From Phyllobates terribilis (Eukaryota): a stretch of DNA of 64,000 nucleotides. Shown here in pieces: positions 2,052 through 56,700 of this stretch; position 1 is the stretch's first letter; every line of letters starts with the position of its first letter. Location of the stretch: the NCBI RefSeq assembly GCF_046119375.1, contig NW_027362771.1, positions 226,424,001-226,488,000 on the forward strand, written 5' to 3'. The notes under the pieces are model-generated. The model worked only from the letters and a program-made list of their open reading frames with translations, did no database searches and was not told the origin of the DNA. The translations under genes and the position numbers were made by a program.

Positions 2052-4982
2052 CTCGACTGCATACTTCTCCTCACCCTGATGCTCCTTCCTCCCACCATGC
2101 CGAGTGTCGTCAGACAGCAACTGATCCCACAGCAGGACACTCTGAAGAGCTGTTCACTGGTCCATTTCCATATTTGTGCCCCTCGCCTGCTCCGCTTGCA
2201 GTGGTGGAAGAGGAGATCCCATGTAGCGATACCCAAATATTTGAACAGCCACGGCCAGAGGAAGTCGATGCTGGCAATTTGTCACAAGAGGTGGACGATG
2301 ACGAGACAATTGCCACGAAGTGAGGAGGAGGATCGTGGTGCGCAAGTGGAAGAGGAGGAGGAGGTGGTGGATGATCTAGTAACTGACCCAACGTGGCAGG
2401 AGGACATGCAGAGCGAGGCCAGCAGCACACGGGGAGGGAGGCAGAGTACCCCAACAGGCAGGAAGAAGCAGTGTGGTGGCCGCACACAGAAGGCGGGCAA
2501 CAGTTCCCCGTAACACCAACACAAGGGACGCTGTCAGTACAACCAGTAGGTCTTCCAGAGTCTGGAATTTTTTTAAAGACTCTGCTGATAACCCAAAAAG
2601 GTCATTTGTACCACCTGCCATGCCAGCATCAGCAGGTGTGACAAAACTACCAACCTGACCACCACCAGCATGATCAGGCACATGTCAGCAAAGCACCCGA
2701 CTTTGTGGGGGCGAACCGCAGGGTCCACGACCAGTGTCTGCGGGTGTCACCACTGCTTCTTCTGCTGTTGTGCGTGTAAGAGAACCCCCTGTTGTGCGTT
2801 CAAGGCAATCCCCTGTCCATACTGCATGCAAAGATGCCCCCTCCTCTCAGTCTTCACTTGTTATGGCAGTTTCTCAAGAAACAGCATCAACGTCCACTTT
2901 CCACCGCAGCGTTCAATTGTCCATATCCCAGACCTTTGAAAGAAAGCGCATATTCGCAGCCAACGCCCCACAGGCCACGGTCCTAAATTCGCACATTTCA
3001 CGACTGCTTGCGTTGGAAATGCTGCCTTTTAGGCTGGTGGAGACGGAATCCTTCCGCAACCTTATGGCGGTGGCCGTCCCTCGGTACTCGGTCCCCAGCC
3101 GACAATATGTTGCCCGGTGTGCCATCCCCGCACTACACAAGCACGTGTCCCAAAACATCTGACGTGCCCTCAACAACGCAGTTACTGGGTGGAGTCGACC
3201 TGACAACGGACACATGGACAAGTGCTTGTGGCCAGGGACGGTACATCTCCCTGACGGCACACTGGGTAAACTTAGTGGAAGCCGGGACCCAGTCGGACCC
3301 TGGGACGGAACACATCCTCCCCACACCAAGGATTGCAGGCCCTATGTCAGTCAGAGTTGCCCCTACAGTGTACAGCTCCTGCGCATCATCCTCCTCCTCA
3401 TGTTCAGCCTCCATCTCAGATATCACCACATCAGTTACAAGCTGGAAGCACTGCAGTACTGCCTCAGCGAAGAGGCAACAGGCTGTGCAGAAACTCATAA
3501 GCTTAGGTGATAAACCTCTCAATGCTTGTGAGTTGTGGACAGCTGTGAAAAAGCAGGCAGATCTGTGGCTGAGACCGCTGAACCTACATCCAGGCATGGT
3601 CGTGTGTGACAATGGCCGTAACCTGGTGGCGGCTCTGAGGAGAGGCGAGATCACACACGTTCCATGCCTGGCTCATGCGCTTAACCTCGTGGTTCAGCGG
3701 TTTCTTAAATCGTACCCAGAGTTGCCAGATCTGCTCGTCAAAGTACGCCGCCTGTCAGCTCATTTTCGGAAGTCGGCTGCAGCTTCCGCCGCCCTTGCTG
3801 TGTTGCAGCAGCGTTTGCAGCTTCTGGCACACCGACTGGTGTGTGATGTCCCTACACATTGAAACTCTACCCTCCACAAGTTGCAAAGGATTTGTGAGCA
3901 GAAGAGAGCAGTTGTGGAGTACCAGCGGCAACAAGGCCATCGATATTCAGGTCAGACTCCACACATAAGACCTCAGGAGTGGACCTGGATGTCTGACATA
4001 TGTACCATCCTGACAAACTTTAAAGGAGTCCACCAAGATGGTGAGTGGCGATGACGCCATCATTAGAGTCAGCATCCCACTTGTCTGTCTTTTGCAACGC
4101 TCTCTGCAGAGAATTAAAGAGGAGGCATTGCAGCCAGGGTATGATATGGATCAAGAAGCCGTAACGGGCGATTACACACAGCCCAGCCTCATCTCATCCC
4201 AACGTGCATTGGGGGACAATGAGGGAGAGGAGGAGGAAGAACAGGAGCTGGTATCATGCACTGTAGATGGTAGTACCTGTACAACTGTCATACCGTCGGT
4301 TCAGCCTGGGTGGCCTGAGGACAGGGGGGAGGAGGAGGAGAGCATGGTCAGTCGTCATCTTGGTGAGGACACGGAAGTCTTGCCCGTTACCAGTCTGGCA
4401 CACATGGCTGACTTTGTTACGCTGCCTTAACAGTTACCCTCGCATTGTCAAAATGTTGGGTGACAGTCATTACTGGTTGGTGACACTTTTAGACCCCCGC
4501 AAAAAGGAGAACTTTCACTCTCTTATTCATGAGGTGGAGAGGTCTACAAAAATGTGGCAGTACCAGAAAGCCCTTGCTGCAGAACTGTTAAAAAAATTCC
4601 CATCTGAACACTCTAGCAGCAGAGGTCACAGTTAGTTGACCAACCAAGGCGTACAGGCGAGAGAGACGCAACTCCAATCCAGCAGAGGCAGGGGAACACT
4701 GTCAACATTCTGGGACAGTTTTCTGAGACCCGCCCTGAGTCCTCCGTGATTCCTCTGTGCCTTTTAATTATTGGGTATCCAAGCTGGACACTGGGAATGA
4801 ACTCGTTCTGTAGGCCTTGGAGGTCCTGGCCTGCCCTGCCGCTAGCGTGTTATCGGAGAGTGTTTTTAGTGCCGCTGGGGGAATTATAACTGACAATGCT
4901 GACAAGCTGACCCTTATCAAAATGAACAAGGGCTGAATTGGGCCAGACTTCTCATCACCACCAAATGACAGCAGAGTAACAA
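2052..4982 (+). pseudogene. hAT transposase pseudogene (ZBED-like), frameshifted
   Basis: BED finger VWNFF..C..CH..RHMSAKH, TTDTWTS, VCDNGRN, CLAH, and C-terminal ACPAASVLSE..FSAAG dimerisation motif, spread over several frames with stops. Confidence 0.9.
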
Positions 4983-5271
4983 AGTCAAATCCACTGTGTT
5001 ATTTCGGGAGGTGTATTCACATGCACCGCTTCACACCCACACATGGGTATACGCTTCCTCATTTCGGCTGTATTTTGCTCTTCTCCTTATTCTCAGCCTC
5101 CACCACCACTATACCACCAGGGTGACAGTGGTCCGTGTAGCCAGCATTGCAAGTTCCTCCGTCCTAATTTTTGGCAGCTTTTGCTTGGAAAGCATAGGCA
5201 AAGACGATGGGAGAACCACTCCCCAGTAATGGGAATAATGTTTTGAATATGCTGGACTGCATGGCTCTTGT

Positions 5272-5595
5272 AAGGGGCATTAAAATAGTCTTGTTAAGCT
5301 ACTGCGACCTCCACCACTCTTCCAAGAGGAATTGATATTGTCTTTTTATTCCACTGCAACCTCAACCACTCTTCCAAGGGGCATTAAAACAGTCTTGTTA
5401 AGCTACTGCGACCTCCACCACTCTTCCAAGGGGCATTAAAACCGTCTTGTTAAGCTACTGCGACCTCCACCACTCTTGCAAGGGGCATTAATACCGTCTT
5501 GTTAAGCTACTCTGAACTCCACAGCTCTTCCAAGGGGCATTAAAATGTTGTTTTTAATTACCGCTAACCTCCATGACTCTTCCAACGGGCATTGC
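5272..5595 (+). repeat. 52-bp tandem repeat, about 6 units, internal to hAT copy 1
   Basis: aaggggcattaaaaccgtcttgttaagctactgcgacctccaccactcttcc-like units start every 52 bp from 5272 to 5584. Confidence 0.9.
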
Positions 5596-5894
5596 ATTTC
5601 CTCCTAATTTTAGTCAGCTTTTGCATTTCAATGCCTAGGCGAACACTAAGGGAGACCCACTCCCCAATAATGGGTAGAAGGTTTTTAGTACGCTGTAATC
5701 CACGTGTTTCAAGGGGCATTGAAGTTAAAGGGCCGGCGTTTTGCTTATGTGAGCACTGTAGTCCACGGGAATCTGACTGAGAGCCAGTGAAAAGGATATT
5801 GCGGGCCAGTTGCTCCACACCCCAAAGTAACAACCTCCACTTAGTGTATACATAACATTATAGTCTATGGGTGATAGATGCCACTGTTAGGCAT

Positions 5895-33287: not shown

Positions 33288-33290
<3 letters not shown>

Positions 33291-37179: not shown

Positions 37180-37328
37180 NNNNNNNNNNNNNNNNNNNNN
37201 NNNNNNNNNNNNNNNNNNNNNNNNNNNNNNNNNNNNNNNNNNNNNNNNNNNNNNNNNNNNNNNNNNNNNNNNNNNNNNNNNNNNNNNNNNNNNNNNNNNN
37301 NNNNNNNNNNNNNNNNNNNNNNNNNNNN
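37180..37328. other. Assembly gap (149 N)
   Basis: Run of N. Confidence 1.
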
Positions 37329-37624: not shown

Positions 37625-37816
37625 GGCCATGGCCCCACTATCAGTATTTGGTCAGTATTTTTTCTCAGGAGTGGGAGCCAAAACCAGGAGTGGGTGATAA
37701 ATGCAGAATTAGTGACTTGTTTCTATTATACCTTTTCTCTGATTGTTCCTTACCTGGTTTTAGCTCCCACTCCTGAGAAAAAATACTGACTGAATACTGA
37801 TAGTGGGGCCATGGCC
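37625..37816. mobile_element. 192-bp Harbinger-type MITE
   Basis: taa|ggccatggccccactatcagtatt...aatactgatagtggggccatggcc|taa. Confidence 0.88.
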
Positions 37817-38984
37817 TAAGGGCTAGTATTTTGTGGGACAAGTTATAGTTTCGAATAACACCATTTATTTTACCAAATAATGTACTGAAAAACAGGGAAA
37901 AATCGTGGTGTGGTGAAATGGTGAAAACATGCCACTGATTTTTGTTTTTTGTTTTCATGATTATTTTCGACGATGCCAAAAAAAGGGGTCATCATTTTCT
38001 GTAACTTTTTTATTTTTCTATTCAAGAAGCTGGGTATGGGCTTATTTTTTAGCTGACGTTTTTATCGATAACATTTTGGGGTACATAGGACGTTTTGATT
38101 GTACTTTTCTTAGGAAGTGCAGGAAGAAATGGCAATCCTTGTGTTCTATTTTTTTAGCATTTAACATACAGTTTAAATATTTTTATATATTGATAGACAG
38201 GACTTTTTGGGATACGAAATATATATTTTTTTATTTCTTTGTTTTTAATTGGTTGAGGGGGTGATTTAAACTTTTATATATTGTTTAAAAATATTTAAAA
38301 AAAAAACATTTTTTTTTACATCTTTACTAGTGTTGAGCGAGCATGCTCGACACTGCTCGGTACTCGCCCGAGCATCTCACTACTCGGGATGTTCGGCGAG
38401 CACCGAGCATTTCCGGGTTACTCGGGCGGGAGCTCGGGTCTCCGCCCTGCACGTTTGGCGCGCTTTACAGAGCCAATGAACATGCAGGGATTGCCAACCA
38501 GTCACTGGAATGCCGCAGCCATGTTGTTTGTGGGCATTACAGTGATTGGCTGGCCGCACAGCGTCACCTCGAGTATTTAAAACCGGCGCGGCCATCTTGG
38601 ACACAGTCGCTCCGGATCAGACAGTGTTGGGTCAGTGCTGCTGAGCTAGGGAGAGATTTATACTCCGAAATAGTTAGTGTAGGGTCTCTAAAGCCTGCAA
38701 AATCAAACAAACAGTCCTTCTCAGGACTAATATCCATCCCAGATATCAGGCAGGCAGGCAGGCTGTATAGGAGACGCAGTGGTTATACCAGCAAACGCTG
38801 CATTACAGTCCTGTGTGCTCCTGTTGGTCAAATTGCTAGACTTATCCCCCGGTCTCAGAGGCCAGGAAACATTTTTTTTTTCATCTAAATCAGACTGTTT
38901 TTTTTTCCTCAGTCAGACTGTACAAATACCCATCTTATTAACCTTTTGGTATTTTTTCCCCCTCCCAAAAACAATTGAGTGTGG

Positions 38985-40130
38985 CTGTGACTGTTCAGAC
39001 ACCAATATATCTGTTTAAAAGAGTCTGGTGTAGGCCAGAAAAATAGAACTGTGGTTTTGCAGTTCCACTGGTCATATCTCTGTATTATCCTGTTTTTGGC
39101 ATTTTTTGCCGTAAAAAAAACTGTAATAGTGTCTCCCTGACTGGTCAGACACCAATATATCTGTTTAAAAGAGTCTGGTGTACACTACATAACAATAACT
39201 GTGGTTTTGCAGTTCCACGGGTCAATTCTCTGTATTATCCTGTTTTTGGCATTTTTTGCCGTAAAAAAAACTGTAATAGTGTCTCCCTGACTGGTCAGAC
39301 ACCAATATATTTGTTTAAAAGAGTCTGGTGTACGCCACATAACTATAACTGTGGTTTTGCAGTTCCACGGGTCAAATCTCTGTATTATCCTGTTTTTGGC
39401 ATTTTTTGCCGTAAAAAAAACTGTAATAGTGTCTCCCTGACTGGTCAGACACCAATATATCTGTTTAAAAGAGTCTGGTGTACGCCACATAACTATAACT
39501 GTGGTTTTGCAGTTCCACGGGTCAAATCTCTGTATTATCCTGTTTTTGACATTTTTTGCCGTAAAAAAAAAACTATAATAGTGTCACCCTGACTGGTCAG
39601 ACACCAATATATCTGTTTAAAAGAGTCTGGTGTAGGCCAGAAAAATAGAACTGTGGTTTTGCAGTTCCACGGGTCAAATCTCTGTATTATCCTGTTTTTG
39701 GCATTTTTTGCCGTAAAAAAAACAGTAATAGTGTCTCCCTGACTGGTCAGACACCAATATATCTGTTTAAAAGAGTCTGGTGTAGGCCAAAAAAATAGAA
39801 CTGTGGTTTTGCAGTTCCACGGGTCAAATCTCTGTATTATCCTGTTTTTTGGCATTTTTTGCCGTAAAAAAACCTGTAATAGTGTCTCCCTGAGTGGTCA
39901 GACACCAATATATCTGTTTAAAAGAGTCTGGTGTAGGCCAGAAAAATAGAACTGTGGTTTTGCAGTTCCACGGGTCAAATCTCTGTATTATCCTGTTTTT
40001 GGCCTGTTTTACTTAAAAAAAAACAGTAATAGTGTCTCCCTGTCTGTTCAGTCACAAATATATCTGTTTAAAAGATTGTGGTGTAGGCCAGAGAAATAGA
40101 ACTGTAGTTTTCCTCTTCCACGGTTCTAAT
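38985..40130. repeat. 150-bp tandem repeat, about 7.6 units, inside the hAT upstream of the transposase
   Basis: accaatatat recurs at 39001, 39151, 39301, 39451, 39603, 39753 and 39903. Confidence 0.95.
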
Positions 40131-40192
40131 CTCCTTTTTATTACCCTTTTTTCATTGATAGCGCGAGTGTAAGCTATTTTATTTCATTTACA

Positions 40193-43183
40193 ATGGGCAA
40201 GGCGCGTGGCAAGGTACCTGGAACTGGACATTCTGGTGATGGTGCGTGTAGGGGACGGGGCCGTGGCCAAGGTGAAAATGTGCCACAACCAACAGCCACA
40301 TCTTCTCGCTCCCACTTCTTGACCGAATTACTAGGGAAGCACACTACAATACCAGTATTGCGAACTGATCAGTGTGAACAGGTTATTAATTGGTTAGCAG
40401 ATAATACTTCCAGTTACAGTTACCTGGGCACCACCACCTCCGGCCTGTCTTCCACATGGTCAAGATTTAGTAGCCGTGAGTCTCGACCGCATACTCCTCC
40501 TCACCCTGATGCTCCTTCCTCCCACCATGCCGAGTGTCGTCAGACACCAATCGATCCCACACTTGGACACTCTGAAGAGCTGTTCACTGGTCCATTTCCA
40601 TATTTGTGCCCCTCACCTGTTCCTCTTGAAGTGGAAGAGGAGATCTCATGTAGCGATGCCCAAATATTTGAACAGCCACGGCCAGAGGAAGTCGACGCTG
40701 GCAATTTGTAACAAGAGGTGGACGATGACGAGACACAATTGCCACGAAGTGAGGAGGAGGATCGTGGTGCGCAAGTGGAAGAGGAGGAGGTGGTGAATGA
40801 TCTAGTAACTGACCCAACGTGGCAGGAGGACACGCAGAGCGAGGCCAGCAGCACACAGGGGGAGGGAGACAGAGTACCCCAACAGGCAGGAAGAAGCAGT
40901 GTGGTGGCCGCACACAGAAGGCGGGCAACAGTTCCCCGTAACACCAACACAAGGGACGTTGCCAGTACAACCGGTAGGTTGTCCAGTGTCTGGAATTTTT
41001 TTAAAGACTCTGCTGATAACCCCAAAAAGGCCATTTGTACCACCTGCCATGCCAGCATCAGCAGGGGTGACAAAACTACCAGCCTGACCACCACCAGCAT
41101 GATCAGGCACATGTCAGCAAAGCACCCGACTTTGTGGGGCGAACCCCAGGGTCCACGACCAGTGTCAGCGGGTGTCACCACTGCTTCTTCCGCTGTTGTG
41201 CGTGTAATAGAACCCCCTGTTGTGCGTGCAAGGCAATCCCCTGTCCATACTGCATGCAAAGATGCCCCCTCCTGTCAGTCTTCACTTGTTATGGCAGTTT
41301 CTCAAGAAACAGCATCAACGTCCACGTCCACGTCCCACAGCAGCGTTCAATTGTCCATATCCCAGAGCTTTGAACGAAAGCGCAAATTCGCAGTCAACGC
41401 CCCACAGGCCACAGTCCTAAATTCTCACATTTCTCGACTGCTCGCAACCTTATGGCGGTGGCCGTCCCTCGCTACTCGGTCCCCAGCCGACACTATTTTG
41501 CCCGGTGTGCCATCTCCTCACTACACAAGCACGTGGATTGCTGGCCCTATGTCAGTCAGAGTTGCCCCCACAGTGTACAACTCCTGCGCATCATCCTCCT
41601 CCTCCTCATGTTCAGCCTCCATCTCAGATATCACCACATCAGTTACAAGCTGGAAGCACTGCAGTACTGCCTCAGCCAAGAGGCAACAGGCTGTGCTGAA
41701 GCTCATAAGCTTCGGTGATAAACCTCACACTGCTTGTGAGTTGTGGACAGCTGTGAAAGAGCAGGCAGATCTGTGGCTGAGATCGCTGAACCTACATCCA
41801 GGCATGGTCGTGTGTGACAATGGCCGTAACCTGGTGGCGGCTCTGAGGCGAGGCGAGATCACACACGTACCATGCCTGGCTCATGTGCATAACCTCGTGG
41901 TTCAGCGGTTCTTAAATCATACCCCGAGTTGCCAGATCTGCTTGTCAAAGTACGCCGCCTGTCAGCTCATTTTCGCAAGTCGGCTACAGCTTCTGCCGCC
42001 CTTGCTGTGTTGCAGCAGCATTTGCAGCTTCCGGCACACCGACTGGTGTGTGATGTCCCCACACGTTGGAACTCTACCCTCCACATGTTGCCAAGGATTT
42101 GTGAGCAGAAGAATGCAGTTGTGGAGTACCAGCTGCAACAAGGCCGTCGATATTCAGGTCAAACTCCACACATAATGCCTCAGGAGTGGACCTGGATGTC
42201 TGACATATGTACCATCCTGACAAATTTAGAGGAGTCCACCAAGATGGTGAGTGGCGATGACGCCATCATTAGCGTCAGCATCCCACTTGTCTGTCTTTTA
42301 CAACGCTCTCTGCAGAGAATTAAAGAGGAAGCATTGCAGCCAGAGTATGTTGAGATGGATCATGAACCCGTAATGGGCGATTACACACAGCCCAGCCTCA
42401 TCTCATCCCAACGTGCATTGGGGGACAATGAGGGAGAGAAGGAGGAGGAGGAGGAAGAACAGGAGCTGGTATCATGCGCTGTAGACAGTAGTACCTGTAC
42501 AACTGTCATACAGTCGGTTCATCGTGGGTGGCCTGAGGACAGGGGGGAGGAGGAGGAGGAGACCATGGTCAGTTGTCATCTTGGTGAGGACATGGAAGTC
42601 TTGCCCATTACCAGTCTGGCACGCATTGCTGACTTTATGTTACGCTGCCTTAACCGCAACCCTTGCTGCAGAACTGTTTAAAAAATTCCCATCTGAACAC
42701 GCTAGCGGCAGAGGTCACAGTTCGTTGACCAACCACGGCGTACAAGCGAGAGAGAGGCAGCTCCAATCCAGCAGAGGCAGGGGAACACTGTCAACGTTCT
42801 GGGACAGTTTTCAGAGACCTGCCCAGCTTACAGGCCCTGAGGCACGGGGTACTCTCACAAGGAGTGGAAAGTTTCAAAAGATGGTGAGGGAGTACCTTGC
42901 CGACCGTAACAGCGTCCTCCGTGATTCCTCTGTGCCTTTTAATTATTGGGTTTCCAAGCTGGACACTTGGAATGAACTCGCTCTGTACGCCTTGGAGGTC
43001 CTGGCCTGCCCTGCTGCTAGCGTGTTATCAGAGCGTGTTTTTAGTGCCGCTGGGGGAATTATAACTGATAAGCGCACTTGCCTGTCAACTGACAATGCTG
43101 ACAAGCTGACCCTTATCAAAATGAACAAGGGCTGGATTGGGCCAGACTTCTCATCACCACCAAATGACAGCAGAGTAACATAA
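40193..43183 (+). pseudogene. hAT transposase pseudogene (BED finger, DDE core partly deleted, dimerisation domain)
   Basis: MGKARG start, stop at 40709 (TCA in copy 1), BED finger SVWNFF..CTTCH..RHMSAKH, CDNGRN, CLAH, TRWNST, LACPAASVLSERVFSAAG; three internal deletions relative to copy 1. Confidence 0.93.
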
Positions 43184-46100
43184 AGTCAAATCCACTGTGT
43201 TATTTCGGGAGGTGTATTCCCATGCACCGCTTCACACCCACACATGGGTATACGCTTCCTCAATTCGGCTTTTTTTTGCTCTTCTCCTTATCCTCAGCCT
43301 CCACCACCACTATACCACCAGGGTGACTGTGGTCCGTGTTGCCAGCATTGCAAGTTCCTCCGTCCTAATTTTTGGCAGCTTTTGCTTGGAAGGCATAGGC
43401 AAAGACTATGGGAGACCCACTCCCCAATAATGGGAATAATGTTTTTAATATGCTGTACTGCATGGCTCTTGTAAGGGGCATTAAAACCATCTTGTTAAAC
43501 CACTCTGACCTCCACGTCTCTTCCAAGGGGCATTTAAACCGTCTTGTTAAGCTACTGCAACCTCCACGTCTCTTCCATGGGGCATTAAAACCATCTTGTT
43601 AAGCTAATCCGACCTCCACCACTTTTCCAAGGGGCATTAAAACCGTCTTGTTAAGCTACTGCGACCTCCACGTCTTTTCCAAGGGGCATTTAAACCGTCT
43701 TGTTAAGCTACTGCAACCTCCACGTCTCTTCCAAGGGGCATTAAAACCGTCTTGCTAAGCAACTGCGACCTCCACCACTTCTCCAAGGGGCATTAAAACC
43801 GTCTTGTTAAGCTACTGCGACCTCCACGTCTCTTCCAAGGGGCATTTAAACCGTCTTGTTAAGCTACTGCAACCTCCACGTCTCTTACAAGGAGCATTAA
43901 AACCGTCTTGTTAAGCTAATGCGACCTCCACCACTTTTCCAAGGGGCATTAAAACCGTCTTGTTAAGCTACTGCGACCTCCACCACTTTTCCAAGGGGCA
44001 TTAAAGCTGTCTTGTTAAGCTACTTTCACCTCCACGTCTCTTCCAAGGGGCATTAAAACCGTCTTGTTAAGCTAATGCAACCTCCACCACTTTTCCAAGG
44101 GGCATTAACACCATCTTGTTAAGCTACTGCGACCTCCACGTCTCTTGCAAGGGGCATTTAAACCGTCTTGTTAAGCTACTGCAAACTCCACGTCTCTTCC
44201 AAGGGGCATTAAAACCATCTTGTTAAGCTACTGCGACCTCCACCACTTTTCCAAGGGGCATTAAAACCATCTTGTTAAGCTTCTGCGACCTCCACCACTT
44301 TTCCAAGGGGCATTAAAGTTGTCTTGTTAAGCTACTGTAACCTCCACTACTCTTCCAGGGGGCATTTAAACCGTCTTGTTAATCTACTGCAACCTGCACG
44401 TCTCTTCCAAGGGGCATTGAAACCGTCTTGTTAAGCTACTGCGACATCCAACACTTTTCCAAGGGGCATTAAAGCTGTCTTGTTAAGCTACTGTGACCTC
44501 CACCACTTTTCCAAGGGGCATTATAACCGTCTTGTTAAGCTACTGCGACCTCCACCGCTCTTCCAAGGAGCATTAAAACCTTCTTGTTAAGCTAATGTGA
44601 CCTCCACCACTTTTCCCAGGGGCATTGATATTATCTTTTTATTCCACTGCGACCTCCACGTCTCTTCCAAGGGGCATTAAAACCGTCTTTTTAAGCTAAT
44701 GCGACCTCCACCACTTTTCCAAGGGGCATTAAAACCATCTTGTTAAGCTACTGCGACCTCCACGTCTCTTCCAAGGGGCATTTAAACTGTCTTCTTAAGC
44801 TACTGCAAACTCCACGTCTCTTCCAAGGGGCATTAAAACCATCTTGTTAAGCTACTGCGACCTCCACGTCTCTTCCAAGGGGCATTTAAACCGTCTTGTT
44901 AAGCTACTGCAAACTCCACGTCTCTTCCAAGGGGCATTAAAACCATCTTTTTAAGCTACTGCGACCTCCACCACTTTTCCAAGGGGCATTAAAACCGTCT
45001 TGTTAAGCTTCTGCGACCTCCACCACTTTTCCAAGGGGCATTAAAACCGTCTTATTAAGCTACTGCGACCTCCACCACTTTTCCAAGGGGCATTAAAGCT
45101 GTCTTGTTAAGCTACTTTCACCTCCACCACTCTTCCAAGGGGCATTTAAACCGTCTTGTTAAGATACTGCAACCTCCACGTCTCTTCCAAGGGGCATTAA
45201 AACCGTCTTGTTAAGCTAATGCGACCTCCACCACTTTTCCAAGGGGCATTGACACCATCTTGTTAAGCTACTGCGACCTCCACGTCTCTTGCAAGGGGCA
45301 TTTAAACCGTCTTGTTAAGCTACTGCAAACTCCACGTCTCTTCCAAGGGGCATTAAAACCATCTTGTTAAGCTACTGCGACCTCCACCACTTTTCCAAGG
45401 GGCATTAAAACCATCTTGTTAAGCTTCTGCGACCTCCACCACTTTTCCAAGGGGCATTAAAACGGTCTTGTTAAGCTACTGCGACCTCCACGTCTCTTCC
45501 AAGGGGCATTTAAACCGTCTTGTTAAGCTACTGCAACCTGCACGTCTCTTCCAAGGGGCATTGAAACCGTCTTGTTAAGCTACTGCGACATCCAACACTT
45601 TTCCAAGGGGCATTAAAGCTGTCTTGTTAAGCTACTGCGACCTCCACCACTTTTCCAAGGGGCATTAAAACCGTCTTGTTAAGCTACTGCGACCTCCACC
45701 GCTCTTCCAAGGAGCATTAGAACCTTCTTGTTAAGCTAATGTGACCTCCACCACTTTTCCCAGGGGCATTGATATTATCTTTTTATTCCACTGCGACCTC
45801 CACGTCTCTTCCAAGGGGCATTAAAACCGTCTTGTTAAGCTACTGCGACCTCCACCCCTCTTCCAACAGGCATTAAAACCATCTTGCTAAGCAACTGCGA
45901 CCTCCACCACTTCTCCAAGTAGCATTAAAACCGTCTTGTTAAGCTACTGCGACCTCCACGTCTCTTCCAAGGGGCATTTAAACCGTCTTGTTAAGCTACT
46001 GCAACCTCCACGTCTCTTCCAAGGGGCATTAAAACTGTCTTGTTAAGCTAATGCGACCTCCACCACTTTTCCAAGGGGCATTAAAACCGTCTTGTTAAGC

Positions 46101-47420
46101 TACTGCGACCTCCACCACTTTTCCAAGGGGCATTAAAGCTGTCTTGTTAAGCTACTTTCACCTCCACCACTCTTCCAAGGGGCATTTAAACCGTCTTGTT
46201 AAGCTACTGCAACCTCCACGTCTCTTCCAAGGGGCATTAAAACCGTCTTTTTAAGCTAATGCGACCTCCACCACTTTTCCAAGGGGCATTAAAACCATCT
46301 TGTTAAGCTACTGCGACCTCCACGTCTCTTCCAAGGGGCATTTAAACCGTCTTGTTAAGCTACTGCAAACTCCACGTCTCTTCCAATGGGCATTAAAACC
46401 ATCTTGTTAAGCTACTGCGACCTCCACGTCTCTTCCAAGGGGCATTTAAACCGTCTTGTTAAGCTACTGCAAACTCCACGTCTCTTCCAAGGGGCATTAA
46501 AACCGTCTTGTTAAGCTAATGCGACCTCCACCACTTTTCCAAGGGGCATTAAAACCGTCTTGTTAAGCTTCTGCGACCTCCACCACTTTTCCAAGCGTCA
46601 TTAAAGTTGTCTTGTTAAGCTACTGTAACCTCCACCACTCTTCCAAGGGGCATTTAAACCGTCTTGTTAAGCTACTGCAACCTCCACGTCTCTTTCAAGG
46701 GGCATTGAAACCGTCTTGTTAAGCTACTGCGACATCCAACACTTTTCCAAGGGGCATTAAAGCTGTCTTGTTAAGCTACTGTGACCTCCACCACTTTTCC
46801 AAGGAGCATTAAAACCATCTTGTTAAGCTACTGCGTCCTCCACCGCTCTTCCATCGAGCATTAAAACCATCTTGTTAAGCTAATGCGACCTCCACCACTT
46901 TTCCCAGGGGCATTGATATTATCTTTTTATTCCACTGCGACCTCCACGTCTCTTCCAAGGGGCATTAAAACCGTCTTGTTAAGCTACTGCTACCTCCACC
47001 GCTCTTCCAACGGGCATTAAAACTGTCTTGTTAAACCACTCTGACCTCCACGTCTCTTCCAAGGGGCATTAAAACCGTCTTGTTAAGCTACTGCGACCTC
47101 CACCACTTCTCCAAGGGGCATTAAAACCGTCTTGATAAGCTACTGTAACCTCCACCACTCTTCCAAGGGGCATTTAAACCGTCTTGTTAAGCTACTGCAA
47201 CCTCCACGTCTCTTCCAATGGGCATTAAAACCGTCTTGTTAAGCTAATGCGACCTCCACCACTTTTCCAAGGGGCATTAAAACTGTCTTGTTAAGCTACT
47301 GCGACCTCCACCACTTTTACAAGGGGCAATAAAGCTGTCTTGTTAAGCTACTGCGACCTCCACCACTTTTCCAAGGGGCATTAAAACTGTCTTGTTAACA
47401 CTAGAACTCCCTGAGGGGTC

Positions 47421-47843
47421 TGTTATGATCTGCTACAAGCACTAAGGAAAGAAAGGAGATCTTTCCCTACAATAGAACTAAGCTAGATCCCTACGATGTA
47501 ACGGGGAACCTGATCCTGCGATCAGACCAGCTAAAGTCCTCGGCTAGTCTGTACGAAGACCTATAGATGCAAGGGAGGGATCCCTACAAGAACTAGGGAC
47601 TGGGATAAAGTTGGACACCTCCTAGCAGAAATTGTAGCAGTAAAAGACAAACACACAACATAGAAAATAAAGGTCCGAAGACCTAGCTAAACTGACTGAA
47701 AAAGGTAACTAAGCACCAGGCTAACTTAAGAGTAGAAATTACAATGAAGTCCAGCAAGGCCAGGAGGGCGGAGCAGGATTAAATAGGCAAAAAAGGTCAT
47801 GTGACCAGCAAGATAGAAAAAACCTAACAGGAGAGTTCTAACA
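47421..47843. mobile_element. Solo LTR (423 bp) inserted in the piggyBac left end
   Basis: TGTTA...TAACA termini, 5-bp TSD gggtc (47416-47420 and 47844-47848). Removing it restores cactagaactccctgaggggtcattttgaccc. Confidence 0.88.
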
Positions 47844-48327
47844 GGGTCATTTTGACCCTTTTGCTATTTATTTTTCTTATAATTTCTAAAGTTTTAACAA
47901 ATGAGTTCTGAGTTTTTGTGACTTTTATTTATTCATGGTAGTGTATATTTTAGGACACAAAAATGAATTGTAATTTTTTCAGGGGCCCGGATTTTACAAT
48001 TCATACCTATAAGTACTGAAGGGGTCAATTTGACCCCATACATAAAAGTAGTAGTAGGCAAGTCACCTAATATTACAGAGTACAGAAATCACAGTGCTTC
48101 TCCCTAGTTGTAGAGTGTAATTGTGTCTTTGCATATCAGGGATGATTCAGCATTTTGTTTTGTCTAAACTTGTCTTAACATGTTTGATCCATGTCTCTTC
48201 TAGCGATTTCTGTCTGCACTTCAGTAGCAAACATTACAGTTGAAGCTATAACTCTGCATGTTTGTACAGTGTCGTTTTATTACTTCTGCGATCTTACAAG
48301 TCCCTTTTTGTGACGTATATTTGAAGC

Positions 48328-50140
48328 ATGAGTAAGCAGAGGGGTCTGACAAGTGATGAAATTTTGAAATGTCTTCAGAATTTATCTGAAAATGAGTCAG
48401 AAGAAGAAAATCAGGAACAAATCGACTCAGAGTCTGATGAAGAATATTTTCCTCATGATATTTCCGAAGAATCAGATTCAAGCAGTAACAGTGATATAAT
48501 TGACGATACCGAAGACTCTGGAGGGGATGATGGACGTCCTACTACGTCAACAAGATGTACGGCCACACCACAATTGCGTAGAGGTAGAGGAAGAGGGACC
48601 AAACCACAATATTTTGGATACGGAGGGAGAAAGAAAGGTACAGTGTACATTCCACCTGCTGTGGGTCATAAAGAGACTTGTCGCGATGGAACTGTGTGGG
48701 AAGTTGTCCCAATTGCTTCTGCATCTACTGGCTGACTGTCCCAACAAAACATTCTATGAGAAACACCTGGACCCACTCCTTATGCCAAAAGGGAGCTCAT
48801 CAATGGGAATGTATCAAGTGCATGGAGGTTGCTAGTTGATGAACCTATACTTCGCCACATAAAAAAGTGTACAGAAATGGAGGCTCGTCAGAAACTTGAA
48901 GATGATAAATGGACAGTTTCTCTAATCGAGCTTGATGCATTTACTGCAATATTATATGCGAGGGGCGCATATAATGCAAATGGTCTTTCTGTAAAAACCT
49001 TGTGGTCAAGTACTTGGGGTCCTCGCTTCTTTCAAGACACTATGCCGAGAAGTAGGTTCGAAGAATTGATGCGATTTGTACGATTTGACATCAAATCCAC
49101 CCGATCTGATACATTGAAGAATGACAAGTTTGCTTTATTTTCTGAAGTGTGGAATCGCTTCATTGGAAATTGTATACTGTGTTACAAACCTGGACAAAAC
49201 CTGACAGTTGATGAACAGCTTTTTCCAACTAAATCAAGATGTCCTTTCACCCAATATATAGCCAATAAGCCGGACAAATTTGGAATAAAATTCTGTCTGG
49301 TAGCTGACGTAGAATCCAAATACCTCTGCAACAGGTTTCCATATTTGGGAAAAGATGAACAACGACCGGCTGATCGGTCTCTTGCACAACACATTGTTCT
49401 CAAACTAATGGATCCATTTTTGAACAAGGGAAGAAATGTTACTACAGATAATTTTTTCACTTCATTGAAACTTGCCAATACACTGAAAGCCAAGAGAACA
49501 AGCATTGTGGGAATGATGAACCGTGCAAGAAAAGAGATTCCATCTTTGGCAAAAAACCTACGAACAAATACATATGAGACTACTCTGATGAAGAATGGTG
49601 ACATCACTCTTACAGTTTACCAAGGTAAACCAAATAAGAATGTCATTTTGCTCAGTAGTCTTCACAAAGATGTAGCAGTTGGAAACAACAAGAAAAAAAA
49701 ACGGAAACGGTAAAATTTTACAATAAAACAAAGGTTGGAGTGGACACAGTAGACCAGATGGCTCGAAAGTACACCACAAGATCTGGAAGCCGCCGATGGC
49801 CTGTTCAGGTGTTTTGTAATGTACTTGATTTAGCAGCTATAAACGCAACAATACTCTATAAAACAGCAACTAGGAGTCAAATTAGCAGACGGGAGTTCAT
49901 TCTTCAGCTGGCATTAGACCTTTCCAAGAATTATTTGGAATCAAGAAGTGGCCCATCATCCGCAATGTCTGAACCACAAACAAAAGGACAAGAAATCTGC
50001 AAGCGTCCAAAATGTGGAGTTGCAACGAAAACAAAACAATTAAAACTTGCTCAAGCTGTAACAAATTAGTTTGTGGAAAATGCACTGGGAAAGTGGAAGA
50101 AAGTACTGTTTGTGTTAACTGTTGGACACCGCACGCTATG
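48328..50140 (+). pseudogene. piggyBac transposase pseudogene (PGBD-like)
   Basis: Acidic N-terminus, TVDEQL, KPDKFGIK, TTDNFF, GVDTVDQM, RWP, Cys-rich tail. Two in-frame TGA (48733 and about 48754), a frameshift in the A-run near 49700 and another in the tail. Confidence 0.93.
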
Positions 50141-51159
50141 ACCATTTAAAAGGAAAATGCGTTTAAACTGCTGTACTTAACACTGTTCCTACTAAGTTAA
50201 AATAAATGTTCTTTAATTTGTTGGCAAAAAAAAAGTTATTTTTACTCCAGAGTCAGTACTTTTGAATGGGGGTCAAAATGACCCCTAATGGTAGTTATAG
50301 GTATTATGAAACATGCGGTAGTTCTATTGTTAAGCTACTGTGACCTCCACCACTCTTCCAAGGGGCATTAAAACCGTCTTGTTAAGCTAATGCGACCTCC
50401 ACCACTTTTCCCAGGGGCATTGATATTGTCTTTTTATTCCACTGCGTCCTCCACGTCTTTTCCAAGGGGCATTAAAACCGTCTTGTTAAGCTACTGTGAC
50501 CTCCACCACTTTTTCAAGTGGCATTGATATTGTCTTTTTATTCCACTGCGAACTCCACCATTCTTCCAACGGGCATTGCATTTCCTCCTAATTTTAGTTA
50601 GCTTTTGCTTTTCAATGCATAGGCGAACACTAAGGGAGACCCACTCCCCAATAATGGGTAGAAGGTTTTTAGTATGCTGTAATCCACGTCTGTTTCAAGG
50701 GGCATTGCAGTTCCTCATAATTATTGGAAAGCCTTCCATTCACTGCTTATGCCAACAGTGCACAGGAGACCCAGTTGCTATAAATGGAAAAAACGGTTTA
50801 GTTAAGACCCTCTGACCTCCATGTCACTTCCAAGGGGCATTGGAGTGCCTCAAAATTTTTGGTAGGCATTGCACTCACTGCATGCCCTATAACTGTGTAG
50901 CCGAACCTCTCCTTTTGGTACAGAAACATATCCTACTAGACATGTGTGGTTGACTGGCCTGATATTGATGTGAATGGTCCCTGTTCCTCCTGCTCTTTCT
51001 CCTTTGCCACCACCTCATCCATCATTCATCACCTGAAGCTTTGTTTTAACGGGAGTCTTAGATCTGGGATAGTAGCAGGAAAACATCCAGCAATCCTGGG
51101 AGGAGGTAGAATATGCGCCAAAACGCTGACCTCAGGCCTAGCCGCTACTACATACATGC

Positions 51160-52195
51160 GCTTGCATTCCAAGAAAAAGCAGATGCTAACTTCTATCATC
51201 ATCATCATGCTCCTCACCTTGGCACTCTCAACTCCCCTGATGGAGAAGCCAGGGCCCACCGGAGTAGTCTGGTTCTCTGGTGGGCTCGTCCAATGCTGCC
51301 CTAAAGCAGGCCGAGCTAAGAAAAGTGTGGGGGGATGTTCCAAGGAGAAATAGGGGCAGTTGGGGACTGTTAATGGACACCCGGCCGCCCCCAGGCGGCT
51401 GGGGACCGTGTGTGGACACCCGGCCGTGGGGCGGCTGGGGACCGAGTATGGACACCCGGCCGCCCCCTGGCGGCTGGGGACCGAGCGTGGACACCCGGCC
51501 GCCGGGCGGCTGGGGACTGATTATGGATACCAAGCCGCCGACACAGCCATGACATGGTGGCCGGCGTCTTCCTCCACATGCCTAAAAGGCCCAATTTCAA
51601 GTGCAAGCAAGCTAGCAGTATGGTATTGCAGCGTGGTGGTGGGTGGGTGGCAGGTTGCACACTTACGCTTGCATTCCAAGAAAACAAAGCAGATGCTAAC
51701 TTCTATCATAATCATCATCATGCTCCTCACCTTGGCACTCTCAACTCCCCTGATGGAGAAGCCAGGGCCCACCGGAGGAGTCTGGTTCTCTGGTGGGCTC
51801 GTCCAATGCTGCCCTAAAGCAGGCCGGGCTAAGAAAAGTGTGGGGGGATGTTCCAAGGAGAAATAGGGGCAGCTGGGGACCGTTTATGGACACCCGGCCG
51901 CCCCCAGGCGGCTGGGGACCATGGGTGGACACCCGGCAGCCGGGCGGCTGGGGACCGAGTATGGACACCCAGCCACCCCCTGGCAACTGGGGACCGAGCG
52001 TGGACACCCGGACGCCGGGCGGCTGGGGACTGAGTATGGATACCTCGCTGCCGAAGCAGCCATGAGGTAGTGGCCAGCTTCGGCCTCCTCCAAACTAAAA
52101 GGCCCCATTTCAAGTGCAAGCAAGCTAGCAGTATGGTATTGCAGCCTGGGGGTGGGTGGGTGGCAGGCTGCATACTTGCGCTTGCATTGCAAGGA
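51160..52195. repeat. About 510-bp tandem duplication with internal about 33-bp GC-rich repeats, in the hAT 3' region
   Basis: gcttgcatt(c/g)caag at about 51160, 51667 and 52180; paired ORFs offset by 513 (51343/51856, 51280/51793). Confidence 0.85.
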
Positions 52196-53799
52196 ATGGG
52201 GGAGGTACAGTTGAACACTGCCCCGGGACAAGGACCTGCACGGGGATAGTTGCAAGTCTGCATCTTCTGATGCGGAAAGGATCACTTCTGATGGGCACAC
52301 TTTTAGGCAGTGACCTGAGTGTCAGAGAGATGCTTCAAGGGGTCTTCCCCATGCTGTTCCCATGTCTTTTCAGCACTGTATGCATGTGTCACACAGCACA
52401 TGGCCAGATAAGATTGTAAAATGTTAAAATGGCATTTCCCGGTGAATGCATTTGTCACGGTTGAAAGCAATACAAAAGTGCAAAAACTCATAAAAAATGC
52501 TACTTGTGAGCATAGCCCAAGGTGTGGAGGAGTATTTTTGTTTTTGGTTATTTATTTTACCTTATACACAAGTCTTAAACTTGGAAAGGATGTTCCTTAA
52601 CATATTTCACAGGAAAACCATTTCAGTTTCGTTTTTGAACGTTTTTATTGTGAGCCCGTTAAAGTGGCTTGATACCTCTGACCACGTTGTTGACAGCAGT
52701 GACCTGGGGGTCAGAAATGCTTCCTGGGGCGATGCCCATGCTGTCCCCATGTCTTTTGAGCACAGTCACTATAGTTTTGGGCACTTTTTAGGCTTTCTAC
52801 AGACTGCCGGGGGTGCCGCCGCAAAAATGCTCGGGTCTCCCATAGACTAACATTGGGCTCGTTGCTCGGGTCGAGCACCCGAGTATCACGGCGAGCTCGG
52901 CCCGAGCTTCGAGCGCCCGAGCATTTTAGTGCTCGCTCAACACTAATCTTTACTTTATTTTTTAGTTACTTTAGTGGACTTGAACCTGCAATTATGTGAT
53001 CTCTTATGCTCTTATAATATATACTGCAATATGACAGTACTGACAATGATGTAATTTAAAGTATGAAGTCGGCTCAGTAACTGAGCCTGCTTCATACCAG
53101 GCAGATGTTGGCTGTATTACATAGCCCACGTTTTGTATGTAACTGCGGCGAGTGGACCTAGCTCCGATTGCTGCAGTTTAACCATTTAAATGCCACTGTG
53201 CAAACTAAATTATATTGCAATATTACATACAATGTTGGCCTGTAGGAACTCAATGGATATCATGCATCCAAAAAATTAGAGGTTGATAAAATATTAACAG
53301 TATTTGTGTTTTTGCAATTAAGATAGAAGTCAAGTTAACACCTTTCCATATGTTGCCAACTCCATTTTGCTAGCGATTGCAGTGCAGTACATTGCATGTG
53401 GTCAGGGGCAGGCAGGGCTGAGGGGCAGGGGGCAAATGCCCCTCAGGCCGCTCCCCCAGCAGCTGTGCAGGGCTGCCTGTTACATCTTCGGTGCTGCTTG
53501 ATGGCTGTCCCTTTAACAAACAGGGCCGTGCACAGTGCACTATGCGGCTATGTCTGCTAGCAGTGATGCTGCCGGACTGACACACAAGCAAAATTAAAGG
53601 CACAGTGCCGGCCCGGCTGCATCACAACTAGCAAACATGGCCGCATAGTGCACTGCCATTTCTGTTAAAGTGACAGCCATCAAGCAGCGCACCCTGCTCA
53701 GCCACATGCCCAGGAGGAGCTGGAAATGAGACAAGCTGGGGGGAGGTGAGCGAGGCTTGTTGCCGGCTTCCCCATATTAAAAAATATTTCTAATGTGTC

Positions 53800-56700
53800 T
53801 GTTTGTGTGAATGTATGATGTGTTTATCTATGTATGTCAGTGTGTATGCCTGTGTATATATTTCTGCCTGTTTATATGTATTTTTGTGAATTTGCCTTCA
53901 AATATGTATATGTGCGTATGCCTGTGCACTTATGTGTTTGTGTATATGTATGTCTGCGTACTGTGTGTACATGTATGCCTGTCTTTGTACTGTATGTGTG
54001 CATGTCTGCGTATTGTATGTATGCATGTCTGTGTACTGTATGTGTACATGTCTGCATATTGCATGTATGCCTGTCTTTGTACTGTATGTGTGCATGTCTG
54101 CGTATTGTATGTATGCATGTCTGCGTACTGTATGTGTACATGTCTGCATAGTGTATGTATGCATGTCTTTGTACTGTATGTGTACATGTCTGCTTAATGT
54201 ATGTATGCAAGTCTGCACACTGTATGTGTACAAGTCTGCATATTGTATGTATGCATGTCTGCTTACTGTATGTGTGCATGTCTGTGTATGTGTGTAAATG
54301 TCTGTGTACTTTATGTGTGCATGTCTGCGTACTGTATATATGCATGTCTGTGTACTGTATGTGTACATGTCTGCATACTGTATGTGTACATGTCGGCATA
54401 TTGCATGTATACCTGTCTGCGTACTGTATGTGTACATGTCTGCATATTGTATGTATGCCTGTCCTTGTACTGTATGTGTGCATGTCTGCGTGTTGTATGT
54501 ATGCATGTCTACGTACTGTATGTGTACATGTCTGCATATTGCATGTATGCCTGTCTTTGTACTGTATGTGTGCATGTCTGCGTATTGTATGTATGCATGT
54601 CTGTGTACTGTATGTGTACATGTCTGCATATTGCATGTATGCCTGTCTTTGTACTGTATGTGTGCATGTCTGCGTATTGTATGTATGCATGTCTGTGTAC
54701 TGTATGTGTACATGTCTGCATATTGCATGTATGCCTGTCTTTGTACTGTATGTGTGCATGTCTGCGTATTGTATGTATTCATGTCTGCGTACTGTATGTG
54801 TACATGTCTGCATAGTGTATGTATGCATGTCTTTGTACTGTATGTGTACATGTCTGCATATTGTATGTATGCATGTCTGCATACTGTATGTGTACATGGC
54901 TACATACTGTATGTATGCATATCTGCGTACTGTATGTGTACATGGCTGCATATTGTATGCTTGTACATGTCTGCGTACTATATGAGTGCATGTCTGCATA
55001 TTGTATGTATGCATGTCTGCGTACTGTATTTGTGCATGTCTGCATATTGTATGTGTTCATGTCTGTGTATGTGTGTACATGTCTGCGTACTGTATGTGTA
55101 CATGTCTGCATATTGTATGTATGCATGTCTGCGTACTGTATGTGCACATGTCTGCATATTGTATGTATGCATGTCTGCGTACTGTATGTGTACATGTCTG
55201 CATATTGTATGTATGCATGTCTGCATACTGTATGTGTACATGTCTGCATATTGTATGTATGCCTGTCTGCTCACTGTATGTGTACATGTCTGCATAGTGT
55301 ATGTATGCATGTCTGCGTACTGTATGTGTACATGTCTGCATATTGTATGTATGCATGTCTGTGTATGTGTGCACATGTCTGCGTACTGTATGTGTACATG
55401 TCTGCATATTGTATGTATGCATGTCTGCGAACTGTATGTGTACATGTCTGCATATTGTATGTATGCATGTCTGCGTACTGTATGTGTACATGTCTGCATA
55501 TTGTATGTGTGTACATGTCTGCGTACTGTATGTGTACATGTCTGCATATTGTATGTATGCCTGTCTGCCTACTGTATGTGTACATGGCTGCATATTGTAT
55601 GTATGCCTATCTACATACTGTATGTATACATGTCTGCATATTGTATGTATGCCTGTCTGCGTACTGTATGTGTACATGTCTGCATATTGTATGTATGCAT
55701 GTCTGCGTACTGTATGTGTACATGTCTGCATATTGTATGTATGCCTGTCTGCGTACTGTATGTGTACATGTCTCCATATTGTATGTGTGTACATGTCTGC
55801 ATATTGTATGTATGCATGTCTTCTTACTGTATGTGTACATGTCTGCATATTGTATGTATGCATGTCTGCGTACTGTATGTGTACATGTCTCCATGTTGTA
55901 TGTATGCATGTCTGCATACTGTATGTGTACATGTCTGCATATTGTATGTATGCATTTCTGCGTTCTGTATTTGTACATGTCTGCATATTTTATCTATGCC
56001 TGTCTGCGTACTATATGTGTACATGTCTGCATATTGTATGTATGCCTGTCTGCGTACTGTATGTGTACATGTCTGCATATTGTATGTATGCCTGTCTGCG
56101 TACTGTATGTGTACATGTCTGCATATTGAATGTATGCCTGTCTGCATACTGTATGTGTACATGTCTGCATATTGTATGTGTGTACATGTCTGCGTACTGT
56201 ATGTGTACATGTCTGCATATTGTATGTGTGCATGTCTGCGTACTGTATGTTCACATGTCTGCATATTGTATATATGCCTGTTTGCGTACTGTATGTGTAC
56301 ATGTCTGCATATTGTATGTATACCTGTCTGCGTACTGTATGTGTACATGTCTCCATATTGTATGTGTGCATGTCTGCGTACTGTATGTGTACATGTCTGC
56401 ATATTGTATGTATGCATGTCTTCTTACTGTATGTGTACATGTCTCCATTGTATGTATGCATTTCTGCTTTCTGTATGTGTACATGTCTGCATATTTTATC
56501 TATGCCTGTCTGCGTACTATATGTGTACATGTCTGCATATTGTATGTATGCCTGTCTGTGTACTGTATGTGTACATGTCTGCATGTTGTATGTATGCTTG
56601 TCTGCGTACTGTATGTGTACTTGTCTACATATTGTATGTGTGCATGTCTGTGTATGTGTGTTCATGTCTGCTTACTGCATGTGTACATGTCTGCATATTG

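What the first reader, a model, noticed from the sequence alone, without database searches (positions are those of the whole stretch)
38328..52945. A complete hAT transposon that carries its own expandable satellite arrays
Seen: one TIR/TSD-bounded element holds a 150-bp array before the transposase, a 52-bp array after it, and a GC-rich 510-bp duplication near the 3' end. The independent copy at 2052-5726 has the same 52-bp array at the same position with about 6 units instead of about 80. The array is therefore part of the element and changes copy number by more than tenfold between insertions. Known: MITE-borne repeats (Xstir in Xmix) exist in Xenopus. Inference: this transposase-coding hAT family may seed satellite arrays genome-wide, and the arrays may affect its mobility or silencing.
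Basis: partly seen in the sequence, partly recalled or inferred. Interest (0 to 1): 0.72.

Follow-up and report, generated by a model that had tools for sequence, protein, structure and literature searches.

The report
Decayed frog hAT carrying tandem arrays
A 14.6-kb cut-and-paste (hAT) transposon in a poison-frog-type genome has perfect ends but a broken enzyme gene, and it carries its own tandem-repeat blocks, one of which grew about 13-fold in this copy; this is a clear example of a known way that transposons spawn satellite-like DNA.

Summary
There is an 8-bp target duplication (ATCTTTAC) and perfect 16-bp inverted ends at 38328/52945. A 150-bp array (7.6 units) lies before a BED/hAT transposase gene and a 52-bp array lies after it. 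A 510-bp duplication sits near the 3' end. A second copy at 2052-5726 has the same 52-bp array, between the same flanks, with 6.3 units.

Four corrections:
- The transposase is a pseudogene in both copies.
- The long array (80.3 units) is split by a nested 2.9-kb piggyBac-like element with a TTAA duplication.
- The second copy is a fragment without ends, so independent insertion is not shown.
- The 510-bp duplication consists of reversed transposase scraps.

New points:
- The 52-bp unit is a ~135-bp repeat that has lost 83 internal bases.
- The long array grew by multi-unit block duplications (1144-bp period, 96-98% identity), which are younger than the 93% identity between the two copies.
- The 150-bp array lies in a 1.67-kb stretch with no sense-strand ATG that ends at a conserved start codon.

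Notes from this scan report similar array-bearing hATs on other DNA of this genome. It is a new member of a known kind.

The parts
38320..38327 (.). Left target-site duplication ATCTTTAC
   Evidence: Read directly. Identical to 52946-52953. Fits the nTnnnnAn target pattern reported for the hAT element Hermes (PMC10368747).
38328..38343 (+). Left 16-bp terminal inverted repeat. CGAGC/GCTCG-type subterminal motifs follow within about 250 bp.
   Evidence: One search finds 9 of 14 CGAGC and 8 of 13 GCTCG within 250 bp of an end.
38522..40192 (+). Sense-strand ATG-free span, a putative long 5' leader that contains the whole 150-bp array
   Evidence: 0 ATG against 29.7 expected. In the non-redundant 675 bp, 0 against 11.4 expected (P about 1e-5). 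The antisense strand has 19 CAT. The first ATG after the span (40193) opens the transposase frame.
38988..40133 (+). 150-bp tandem array, 7.6 units (also scored as a 302-bp dimer)
   Evidence: Its k-mers are absent from the rest of the window. It is unrelated to the 135-bp unit.
40193..43183 (+). hAT transposase pseudogene: an N-terminal extension starting MGKAR, a BED zinc finger, a catalytic core and the hAT dimerisation domain. It is broken by a TAA at 40709-40711, frame changes near 41440-41540, 41905-41959 and 42408-42761, and internal deletions.
   Evidence: Pfam zf-BED 4.7e-09 and Dimer_Tnp_hAT 2.2e-11. tblastn to P0003 and P0004. Frames. Translation. The N-terminus matches P0009 with the same MGKAR start.
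43335..43465 (+). Degenerate ~135-bp 'long unit' L1 directly before the 52-bp array
   Evidence: 81% identical to 50573-50706. Alignment A4.
43466..47398 (+). 52-bp array, first part (75.6 units), with a higher-order period of 22 units (1144 bp)
47399..50329 (+). Nested piggyBac-like element (2,931 bp) with TTAA duplicated at 47395-47398 and 50330-50333, TIRs matching at 11 of 13 positions, and its transposase ORF in pieces
   Evidence: DDE_Tnp_1_7 4.5e-53. Junctions read. Inverted repeat I8.
50334..50577 (+). 52-bp array, second part (4.7 units), in the same 52-bp register as the first part
   Evidence: With the insert and one TTAA removed the array is 4,177 bp (80.3 units) with no indel.
50561..50905 (+). 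Degenerate ~135-bp long units L2-L4. The 52-bp unit equals the first ~20 and last ~32 bases of such a unit.
   Evidence: Alignment A4. Sequence read.
50909..52297 (-). Reversed, decayed scraps of a hAT transposase, in N-to-C order on the minus strand. The BED-region scrap is present twice.
   Evidence: tblastn of P0003 and P0004. tblastn of the copies' own ORF pieces: 48% and 39% identity to copy 2 residues 79-149. Only 15-17-nt exact DNA matches to the forward gene.
51159..52193 (.). GC-rich tandem duplication of about 510-520 bp (51159-51680 / 51666-52193, 91%)
   Evidence: GC 0.58-0.60.
52930..52945 (-). Right 16-bp terminal inverted repeat
52946..52953 (.). Right target-site duplication ATCTTTAC
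2052..5726 (+). Second, end-less fragment of the same family. It matches 40482-43746 and 50337-50712 at about 93% and has a 6.3-unit 52-bp array at 5265-5593. Its transposase is broken at other positions (frame changes at 3188 and 4024).

Best explanation
This is one structurally whole but coding-dead copy of a large hAT DNA transposon of a dendrobatid-type frog genome. It could now move only if another copy supplied transposase.

Its layout, from left to right:
- left end;
- a 1.67-kb leader with no sense-strand ATG that contains a 150-bp minisatellite;
- the transposase gene;
- a 3' region built of degenerate ~135-bp repeats;
- reversed transposase scraps;
- right end.

One 135-bp repeat lost 83 internal bases. 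The resulting 52-bp unit was already tandemly repeated in the common ancestor of the two copies in this window (shown). In the large copy the array then grew to about 80 units by repeated duplication of multi-unit blocks, through unequal exchange or replication slippage (inferred). Later a piggyBac-like element inserted at a TTAA inside unit 76-77 (shown).

The arrays are passenger parts of the element that expand and shrink locally. Nothing here shows that they act on mobility or silencing.
For: - Ends: perfect TSD and TIR.
- hAT identity: BED and hAT dimerisation domains. Closest proteins are ZBED4-like hAT transposases of Phyllobates, Ranitomeya and Anomaloglossus.
- Dead gene: a stop, frame breaks and deletions that differ between the two copies.
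- Array is part of the element: same flanks in both copies, a shared variant first unit and 'B' unit, and a unit derived from the flanking 135-bp repeat.
- Local growth: identity at a lag of 22 units is 0.911 against a background of 0.87. Blocks of 580-660 bp are 96-98% identical, against 93% between the copies.
- The array pre-dates the piggyBac: TTAA duplication, with the 52-bp register preserved across the insert.
- Leader: the ATG-free span ends at an ATG that opens the transposase frame, with the same MGKAR start as relative P0009.
Against: - Only two copies could be examined, and one lacks both ends.
- That the 150-bp array, the reversed scraps and the 3' arm belong to the family is not shown here. 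It rests on the coherence of this one copy and on unchecked scan notes.
- No reads were available, so the array length is the assembly's word.
- Gene conversion inside the array could mimic recent block duplication.
- Loss of units in copy 2, rather than gain in the large copy, cannot be fully excluded.
Confidence: 0.8

Rival explanations
1. The two copies are related by a local segmental duplication or rearrangement, not by separate transposition. The unit-number difference would then be ordinary array instability at two paralogous loci and would say nothing about transposon-borne spread.
For: Copy 2 has no TIR or TSD. It lies 36 kb away on the same strand, and its homology starts inside the ORF and ends inside the repeat region.
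Against: Homology ends sharply, with no shared flanks. The left break abuts a DIRS1-like gag ORF, which suggests interruption by another element. hAT elements are known for local hopping (established knowledge), so closeness is also expected under transposition. A 300-bp MITE with a related TIR and its own TSD at 5895-6194 shows that the family did transpose here.
Confidence: 0.2
2. The long 52-bp array is inflated or mis-built by the assembler.
For: Repeats of 1144-bp period are hard to assemble, and no reads could be laid.
Against: Block copies differ by substitutions at 2-4% of sites, with no indel over 4,177 bp. That is unlike a stutter of identical sequence. A decayed piggyBac-like element with a clean TTAA duplication sits inside the array.
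Confidence: 0.07
3. The arrays are working parts of the element. The 150-bp array would be a selected part of an upstream-ATG-free transposase leader, for example repeated regulatory sites. The 52-bp array and the reversed scraps would be a source of small RNAs that tune the family's activity.
For: Sense-specific absence of ATG over 1.67 kb, ending at the conserved start codon. Unchecked scan notes report the same layout in other hAT families of this genome.
Against: An ATG-free leader shows selection on the leader, not on its repeat number. The 52-bp units are 13% diverged from one another. The scraps share only 15-17-nt matches with the gene. No Rfam family matches. There are no expression data.
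Confidence: 0.1
4. The 14.6-kb unit is a composite: an outer non-autonomous hAT shell into which a 'transposase plus 52-bp array' module was inserted or captured.
For: Copy 2 matches only 40482-50712, not the outer 2.1 kb and 2.2 kb.
Against: The 40482 boundary lies inside the transposase ORF, which starts at 40193 directly after the ATG-free leader. The 50712 boundary lies inside a long repeat unit. No TIR or TSD is found at either boundary.
Confidence: 0.05

Closest known systems
Xmix MITE / Xstir satellite of Xenopus laevis and miDNA4 MITE-driven satellite of X. tropicalis (listed in review PMC9659126; Scalvenzi and Pollet, cited in PMC12054243)
   Same: A frog DNA transposon whose internal sequence forms tandem arrays of variable length, so that the element can carry array seeds to new sites.
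   Different: Those are short non-autonomous MITEs whose units became abundant satellites. Here the carrier is a full-size element with a decayed transposase gene, it has two unrelated arrays, and no array was seen outside the element.
Helentron CgHINE central repeats in Crassostrea gigas, DINE-1 central tandem repeats and Tetris TIR-220 in Drosophila (review PMC9659126)
   Same: Tandem repeats built into a DNA transposon, with copy number varying among copies and arrays extended locally.
   Different: They belong to other superfamilies (Helitron/Helentron, foldback) and all are non-autonomous. The origin seen here, a 52-bp unit made by internal deletion of a 135-bp repeat, is specific to this element.
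hAT superfamily elements such as Hermes, Ac and Tol2
   Same: 8-bp TSD of nTnnnnAn type, short TIRs, subterminal short repeats, and a transposase with a BED finger and a hAT dimerisation domain.
   Different: This element is much larger: 11.7 kb without the nested insert, against about 3-5 kb. About 5.3 kb of it is internal tandem arrays, and it carries reversed transposase scraps. Its transposase has a ~250-residue N-terminal extension before the BED finger.
Other array-bearing hAT elements noted by this scan in the same genome (s1-198884, s1-196784, s1-224837, s1-241555, s1-234841; AI notes)
   Same: The notes report arrays between the left end and the transposase start, an ATG-free leader, and reversed transposase scraps behind the gene.
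   Different: Those notes describe 110-bp or ~149-bp arrays before the gene. A large array behind the gene, as with the 52-bp array here, is not described in them. I could not compare sequences.

Membership tests
hAT superfamily DNA transposon | 8-bp target-site duplication | tested here: met
   ATCTTTAC on both sides. The nearby MITE has the 8-bp TSD TTAGGCAT. Both fit nTnnnnAn (PMC10368747).
hAT superfamily DNA transposon | Short terminal inverted repeats | tested here: met
   16 of 16 positions complementary, starting TAG.
hAT superfamily DNA transposon | Transposase with the C-terminal hAT dimerisation domain | tested here: met
   PF05699, E 2.2e-11, in 42524-43183.
hAT superfamily DNA transposon | N-terminal BED zinc finger | tested here: met
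   PF02892, E 4.7e-09, in 40718-42175.
hAT superfamily DNA transposon | RNase-H-like catalytic core with DDE residues | tested here: inconclusive
   The core region aligns at 48-62% identity to hAT relatives P0003 and P0004. The Pfam copy lacks PF27039, and the catalytic residues were not checked.
Autonomous (transposase-coding) element | Uninterrupted transposase reading frame | tested here: not met
   TAA at 40709, several frame changes, and deletions of conserved coding sequence. Copy 2 is broken elsewhere.
piggyBac superfamily (nested insert 47399-50329) | TTAA target duplication, terminal inverted repeats, DDE_Tnp_1_7 transposase | tested here: met
   TTAA on both sides and TIRs matching at 11 of 13 positions. 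PF13843, E 4.5e-53. The ORF is in pieces.
Transposon-seeded satellite DNA | Tandem unit is part of the element in more than one copy, with variable unit number | tested here: met
   Same flanks and shared variant units in two copies, with 80.3 against 6.3 units.
Transposon-seeded satellite DNA | Arrays of the unit at many loci or free of the element (a true dispersed satellite) | not testable with these tools
Metagenome scans found 0. In the window there are no unit k-mers outside the two copies.

The most novel reading that the evidence does not exclude
Large hAT families of this giant frog genome keep tandem arrays as selected parts of their transcription unit: a repeat-filled, ATG-free 5' leader and a repeat-filled 3' region. 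Because each insertion plants an expandable seed, they would be a main route by which new satellites arise across the genome.
Probability: 0.12. Interest if true: 0.6.

Novelty: new member of a known kind. Interest (0 to 1): 0.3.

Why it matters
The copy shows in one place the steps by which a transposon-borne repeat becomes a satellite-like array: an old 135-bp repeat, a 52-bp deletion derivative, a short array shared by two copies, and block-wise growth to 4.2 kb. A later piggyBac insertion gives a time mark. In 6-12-Gb poison-frog genomes, where hAT elements make up several percent of the DNA (3.91% of the Dendrobates tinctorius assembly, PMC11152451), such elements could account for part of the tandem-repeat load. 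As a single locus it adds an example, not a new principle.

Tried and rejected
There is therefore no depth, long-read or RNA evidence.
- Metagenome scans for the 52-bp core and for the TIR each found 0 loci.
- Scan-note look-ups by sequence and by relatives were blank.
- Rfam found no family in 37500-53500, so the units are not recognisably derived from tRNA, 5S or snRNA.
- The 150-bp unit is unrelated to the 135-bp long unit.
- I rejected the idea that 40482-50712 is a separate module with its own ends. Both boundaries fall inside functional or repeat units and have no TIR or TSD.
- I rejected a present-day long-hairpin silencer, because the scraps match the gene only over 15-17 nt.
- Higher-order phase across the piggyBac, from note s1-224981, cannot be affirmed. 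Units 77-80 match units 55-58 only at background level (0.73-0.90). The 52-bp register is preserved.
The first protein search could not see proteins longer than 849 residues, so it says nothing about full-length (~1000-residue) relatives.
Full report
**Observation**

Tandem Repeats Finder reports three arrays:
- a 150-bp array at 38988-40133 (7.6 units, 93% matches);
- a 52-bp array at 43466-47398 (75.6 units) that resumes at 50327-50577 (4.8 units);
- the same 52-bp unit at 5265-5593 (6.3 units).

Reading the claimed ends shows ATCTTTAC immediately outside both ends and a perfect 16-bp inverted repeat at 38328-38343 and 52930-52945. With up to three mismatches the TIR pattern occurs four times in the window, against 0.61 expected. 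The other two hits bound a 300-bp MITE at 5895-6194 that has its own 8-bp duplication, TTAGGCAT. Both duplications fit the nTnnnnAn target pattern described for the hAT element Hermes (PMC10368747). CGAGC/GCTCG-type motifs cluster within 250 bp of both ends, as subterminal repeats do in hAT elements. The GC-rich duplication 51159-51680 / 51666-52193 is 91% identical.

**The transposase**

Pfam finds a BED zinc finger in 40718-42175 and the hAT dimerisation domain in 42524-43183. The nearest proteins are ZBED4-like hAT transposases of dendrobatid frogs. Partial Phyllobates terribilis models are 84-87% identical, and full-length Ranitomeya and Anomaloglossus proteins are 51-61% identical. The genome is therefore of poison-frog type.

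The gene is not intact:
- The frame that opens at ATG 40193 meets a TAA at 40709-40711.
- tblastn against P0003 and P0004 needs frame changes near 41440-41540, 41905-41959 and 42408-42761.
- Relative to copy 2, the large copy lacks about 46, 182 and 134 bp. The 182-bp piece encodes residues that are conserved in P0003.

Copy 2 is broken at other places, with frame changes at 3188 and 4024. Both copies are therefore pseudogenes that decayed independently. 'Complete' applies only to the ends.

**The second copy**

It aligns to 40482-43746 and 50337-50712 at about 93% and to nothing else in the element. Homology begins sharply inside the transposase ORF and ends sharply inside a 3' repeat unit. 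There is no TIR or TSD. To its left, at 140-1012 on the minus strand, lies an ORF with a LAP2alpha domain. This domain marks the first ORF of DIRS1-like retrotransposons (PMC4495291). Copy 2 may therefore be interrupted by a DIRS1-like element, with its 5' part lying beyond the window. Its independence as an insertion is plausible but not shown.

**The gap in the 52-bp array**

The 2,931 bp at 47399-50329 encode a piggyBac-type transposase in pieces (DDE_Tnp_1_7, E 4.5e-53). They are bounded by TIRs that match at 11 of 13 positions and by a duplicated TTAA taken from the repeat unit. For register analysis only, I removed the insert and one TTAA in silico. The array is then 4,177 bp, or 80.3 units, in perfect 52-bp register with no indel. 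The array therefore existed before the piggyBac arrived.

**Origin and growth of the array**

In both copies the array is flanked by degenerate repeats of about 135 bp: 43335-43465 and 50561-50905 in the large copy, and their counterparts in copy 2. In a MAFFT alignment the 52-bp unit matches the first ~20 and last ~32 bases of the long unit, with an 83-base internal gap. So the 52-bp unit is a deletion derivative of an older repeat of the element's 3' region.

Both arrays start with the same variant unit (GT at positions 6-7). Both also contain a distinctive 'B' variant, found at units 23, 45, 67, 78 and 80 of the large copy and at unit 2 of copy 2. An array with several unit types was therefore present in their common ancestor.

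Mean pairwise identity between units is 0.87. It rises to 0.911 at a lag of 22 units and 0.909 at a lag of 44. This confirms the 1144-bp period of scan note s1-224981. Three blocks of 580-660 bp are 96.0-97.9% identical. That is more alike than the two copies are in unique sequence (93.1-93.7%). Marker units show that other parts of the period are shifted by whole units. The simplest reading is that the large copy's array grew by repeated duplication of multi-unit blocks after the two copies separated. Gene conversion, or loss of units in copy 2, could contribute. The differences between blocks are substitutions, which argues against an assembly stutter.

**The 5' side**

From 38522 to 40192 the sense strand has no ATG, against 29.7 expected. 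Counting the repeat unit only once, there are 0 against 11.4 expected (P about 1e-5). The antisense strand has 19. The first ATG, at 40193, opens the transposase frame with MGKAR. The Ranitomeya relative P0009 has the same start and is 44% identical over the N-terminal 150 residues. The 150-bp array thus lies inside what looks like a long 5' leader free of upstream ATGs. This agrees with scan note s1-241555, made on other hAT families of this genome. It shows past selection on the leader, not on the number of repeats.

**The 3' arm**

On the minus strand, 50909-52297 carries decayed pieces of a hAT transposase in N-to-C order. The BED-region piece occurs once in each half of the 510-bp duplication. 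These pieces are 39-48% identical in protein to copy 2's own sequence. They share only 15-17-nt exact DNA matches with the forward gene. They are therefore old passenger debris, not a present-day hairpin.

**What could not be done**

- Two metagenome scans found nothing.
- As a result, the genome-wide claims are untested: other full copies, arrays outside the family, confirmation by long reads, and expression.
- Within the window, the commonest array k-mers never occur outside the two hAT copies. This is a weak test over about 46 kb.

**Comparison and verdict**

Tandem repeats carried inside DNA transposons that expand into satellite-like arrays are well documented. Examples are Xmix/Xstir and miDNA4 in Xenopus, Helentron CgHINE in oyster, and DINE-1 and Tetris in Drosophila (review PMC9659126). 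Most known carriers are non-autonomous, and this copy is also non-autonomous in practice. Notes of this scan report several array-bearing hAT elements on other DNA of the same genome. I list them as leads, not as evidence.

The finding is real and well resolved. It adds three things: a documented origin of the unit, a relative timing of the array's growth, and the ATG-free leader. It is a new member of a known kind. Interest is 0.3.

Noticed in passing
window 5895-6194: A 300-bp palindromic MITE with TIRs related to the large element (15/16 and 13/16 matches), subterminal CCGAG motifs and its own 8-bp TSD TTAGGCAT. It lies 170 bp after the end of copy 2. It shows that short derivatives of this TIR family were mobilised.
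   Followed up: partly
window 140-1012 (minus strand): A 290-aa ORF with a LAP2alpha domain (E 5e-16), the mark of the first ORF of DIRS1-like retrotransposons. It abuts the left break of copy 2 and may have interrupted it.
   Followed up: partly
window 53991-63994: A 46-bp array of at least 217 units (over 10 kb, 90% matches, T/G-rich) starts about 1 kb after the hAT right end and runs to the end of the window. It is unrelated to the hAT arrays.
   Followed up: no
window 31177-35082, and 8773-9660: Two inverted arms of about 0.85 kb (31272-32101 and 34145-35013, 81%) enclose a GC-rich 33-bp array (33508-34093, 17.5 units). A third arm-like copy lies at 8773-9660. This is possibly another transposon family with a built-in array.
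   Followed up: no
window 28574-30404 and 11556-12267: Two further tandem arrays: 55/111-bp with 33 units, and 32/64-bp with about 22 units. Tandem arrays of 30-150-bp units are frequent in this 64-kb stretch, whether or not hAT sequence is near.
   Followed up: no
window 15630-16547 (minus strand); 14370-15578 and 20437-21623: A Tc1/mariner-type transposase ORF (HTH_Tnp_Tc3_2, DDE_3). Next to it is a 1.2-kb inverted pair that is 87.5% identical.
   Followed up: no
window 37180-37328: A run of 149 N lies 1 kb before the left end of the element. It is outside the element, and I left it untouched.
   Followed up: no
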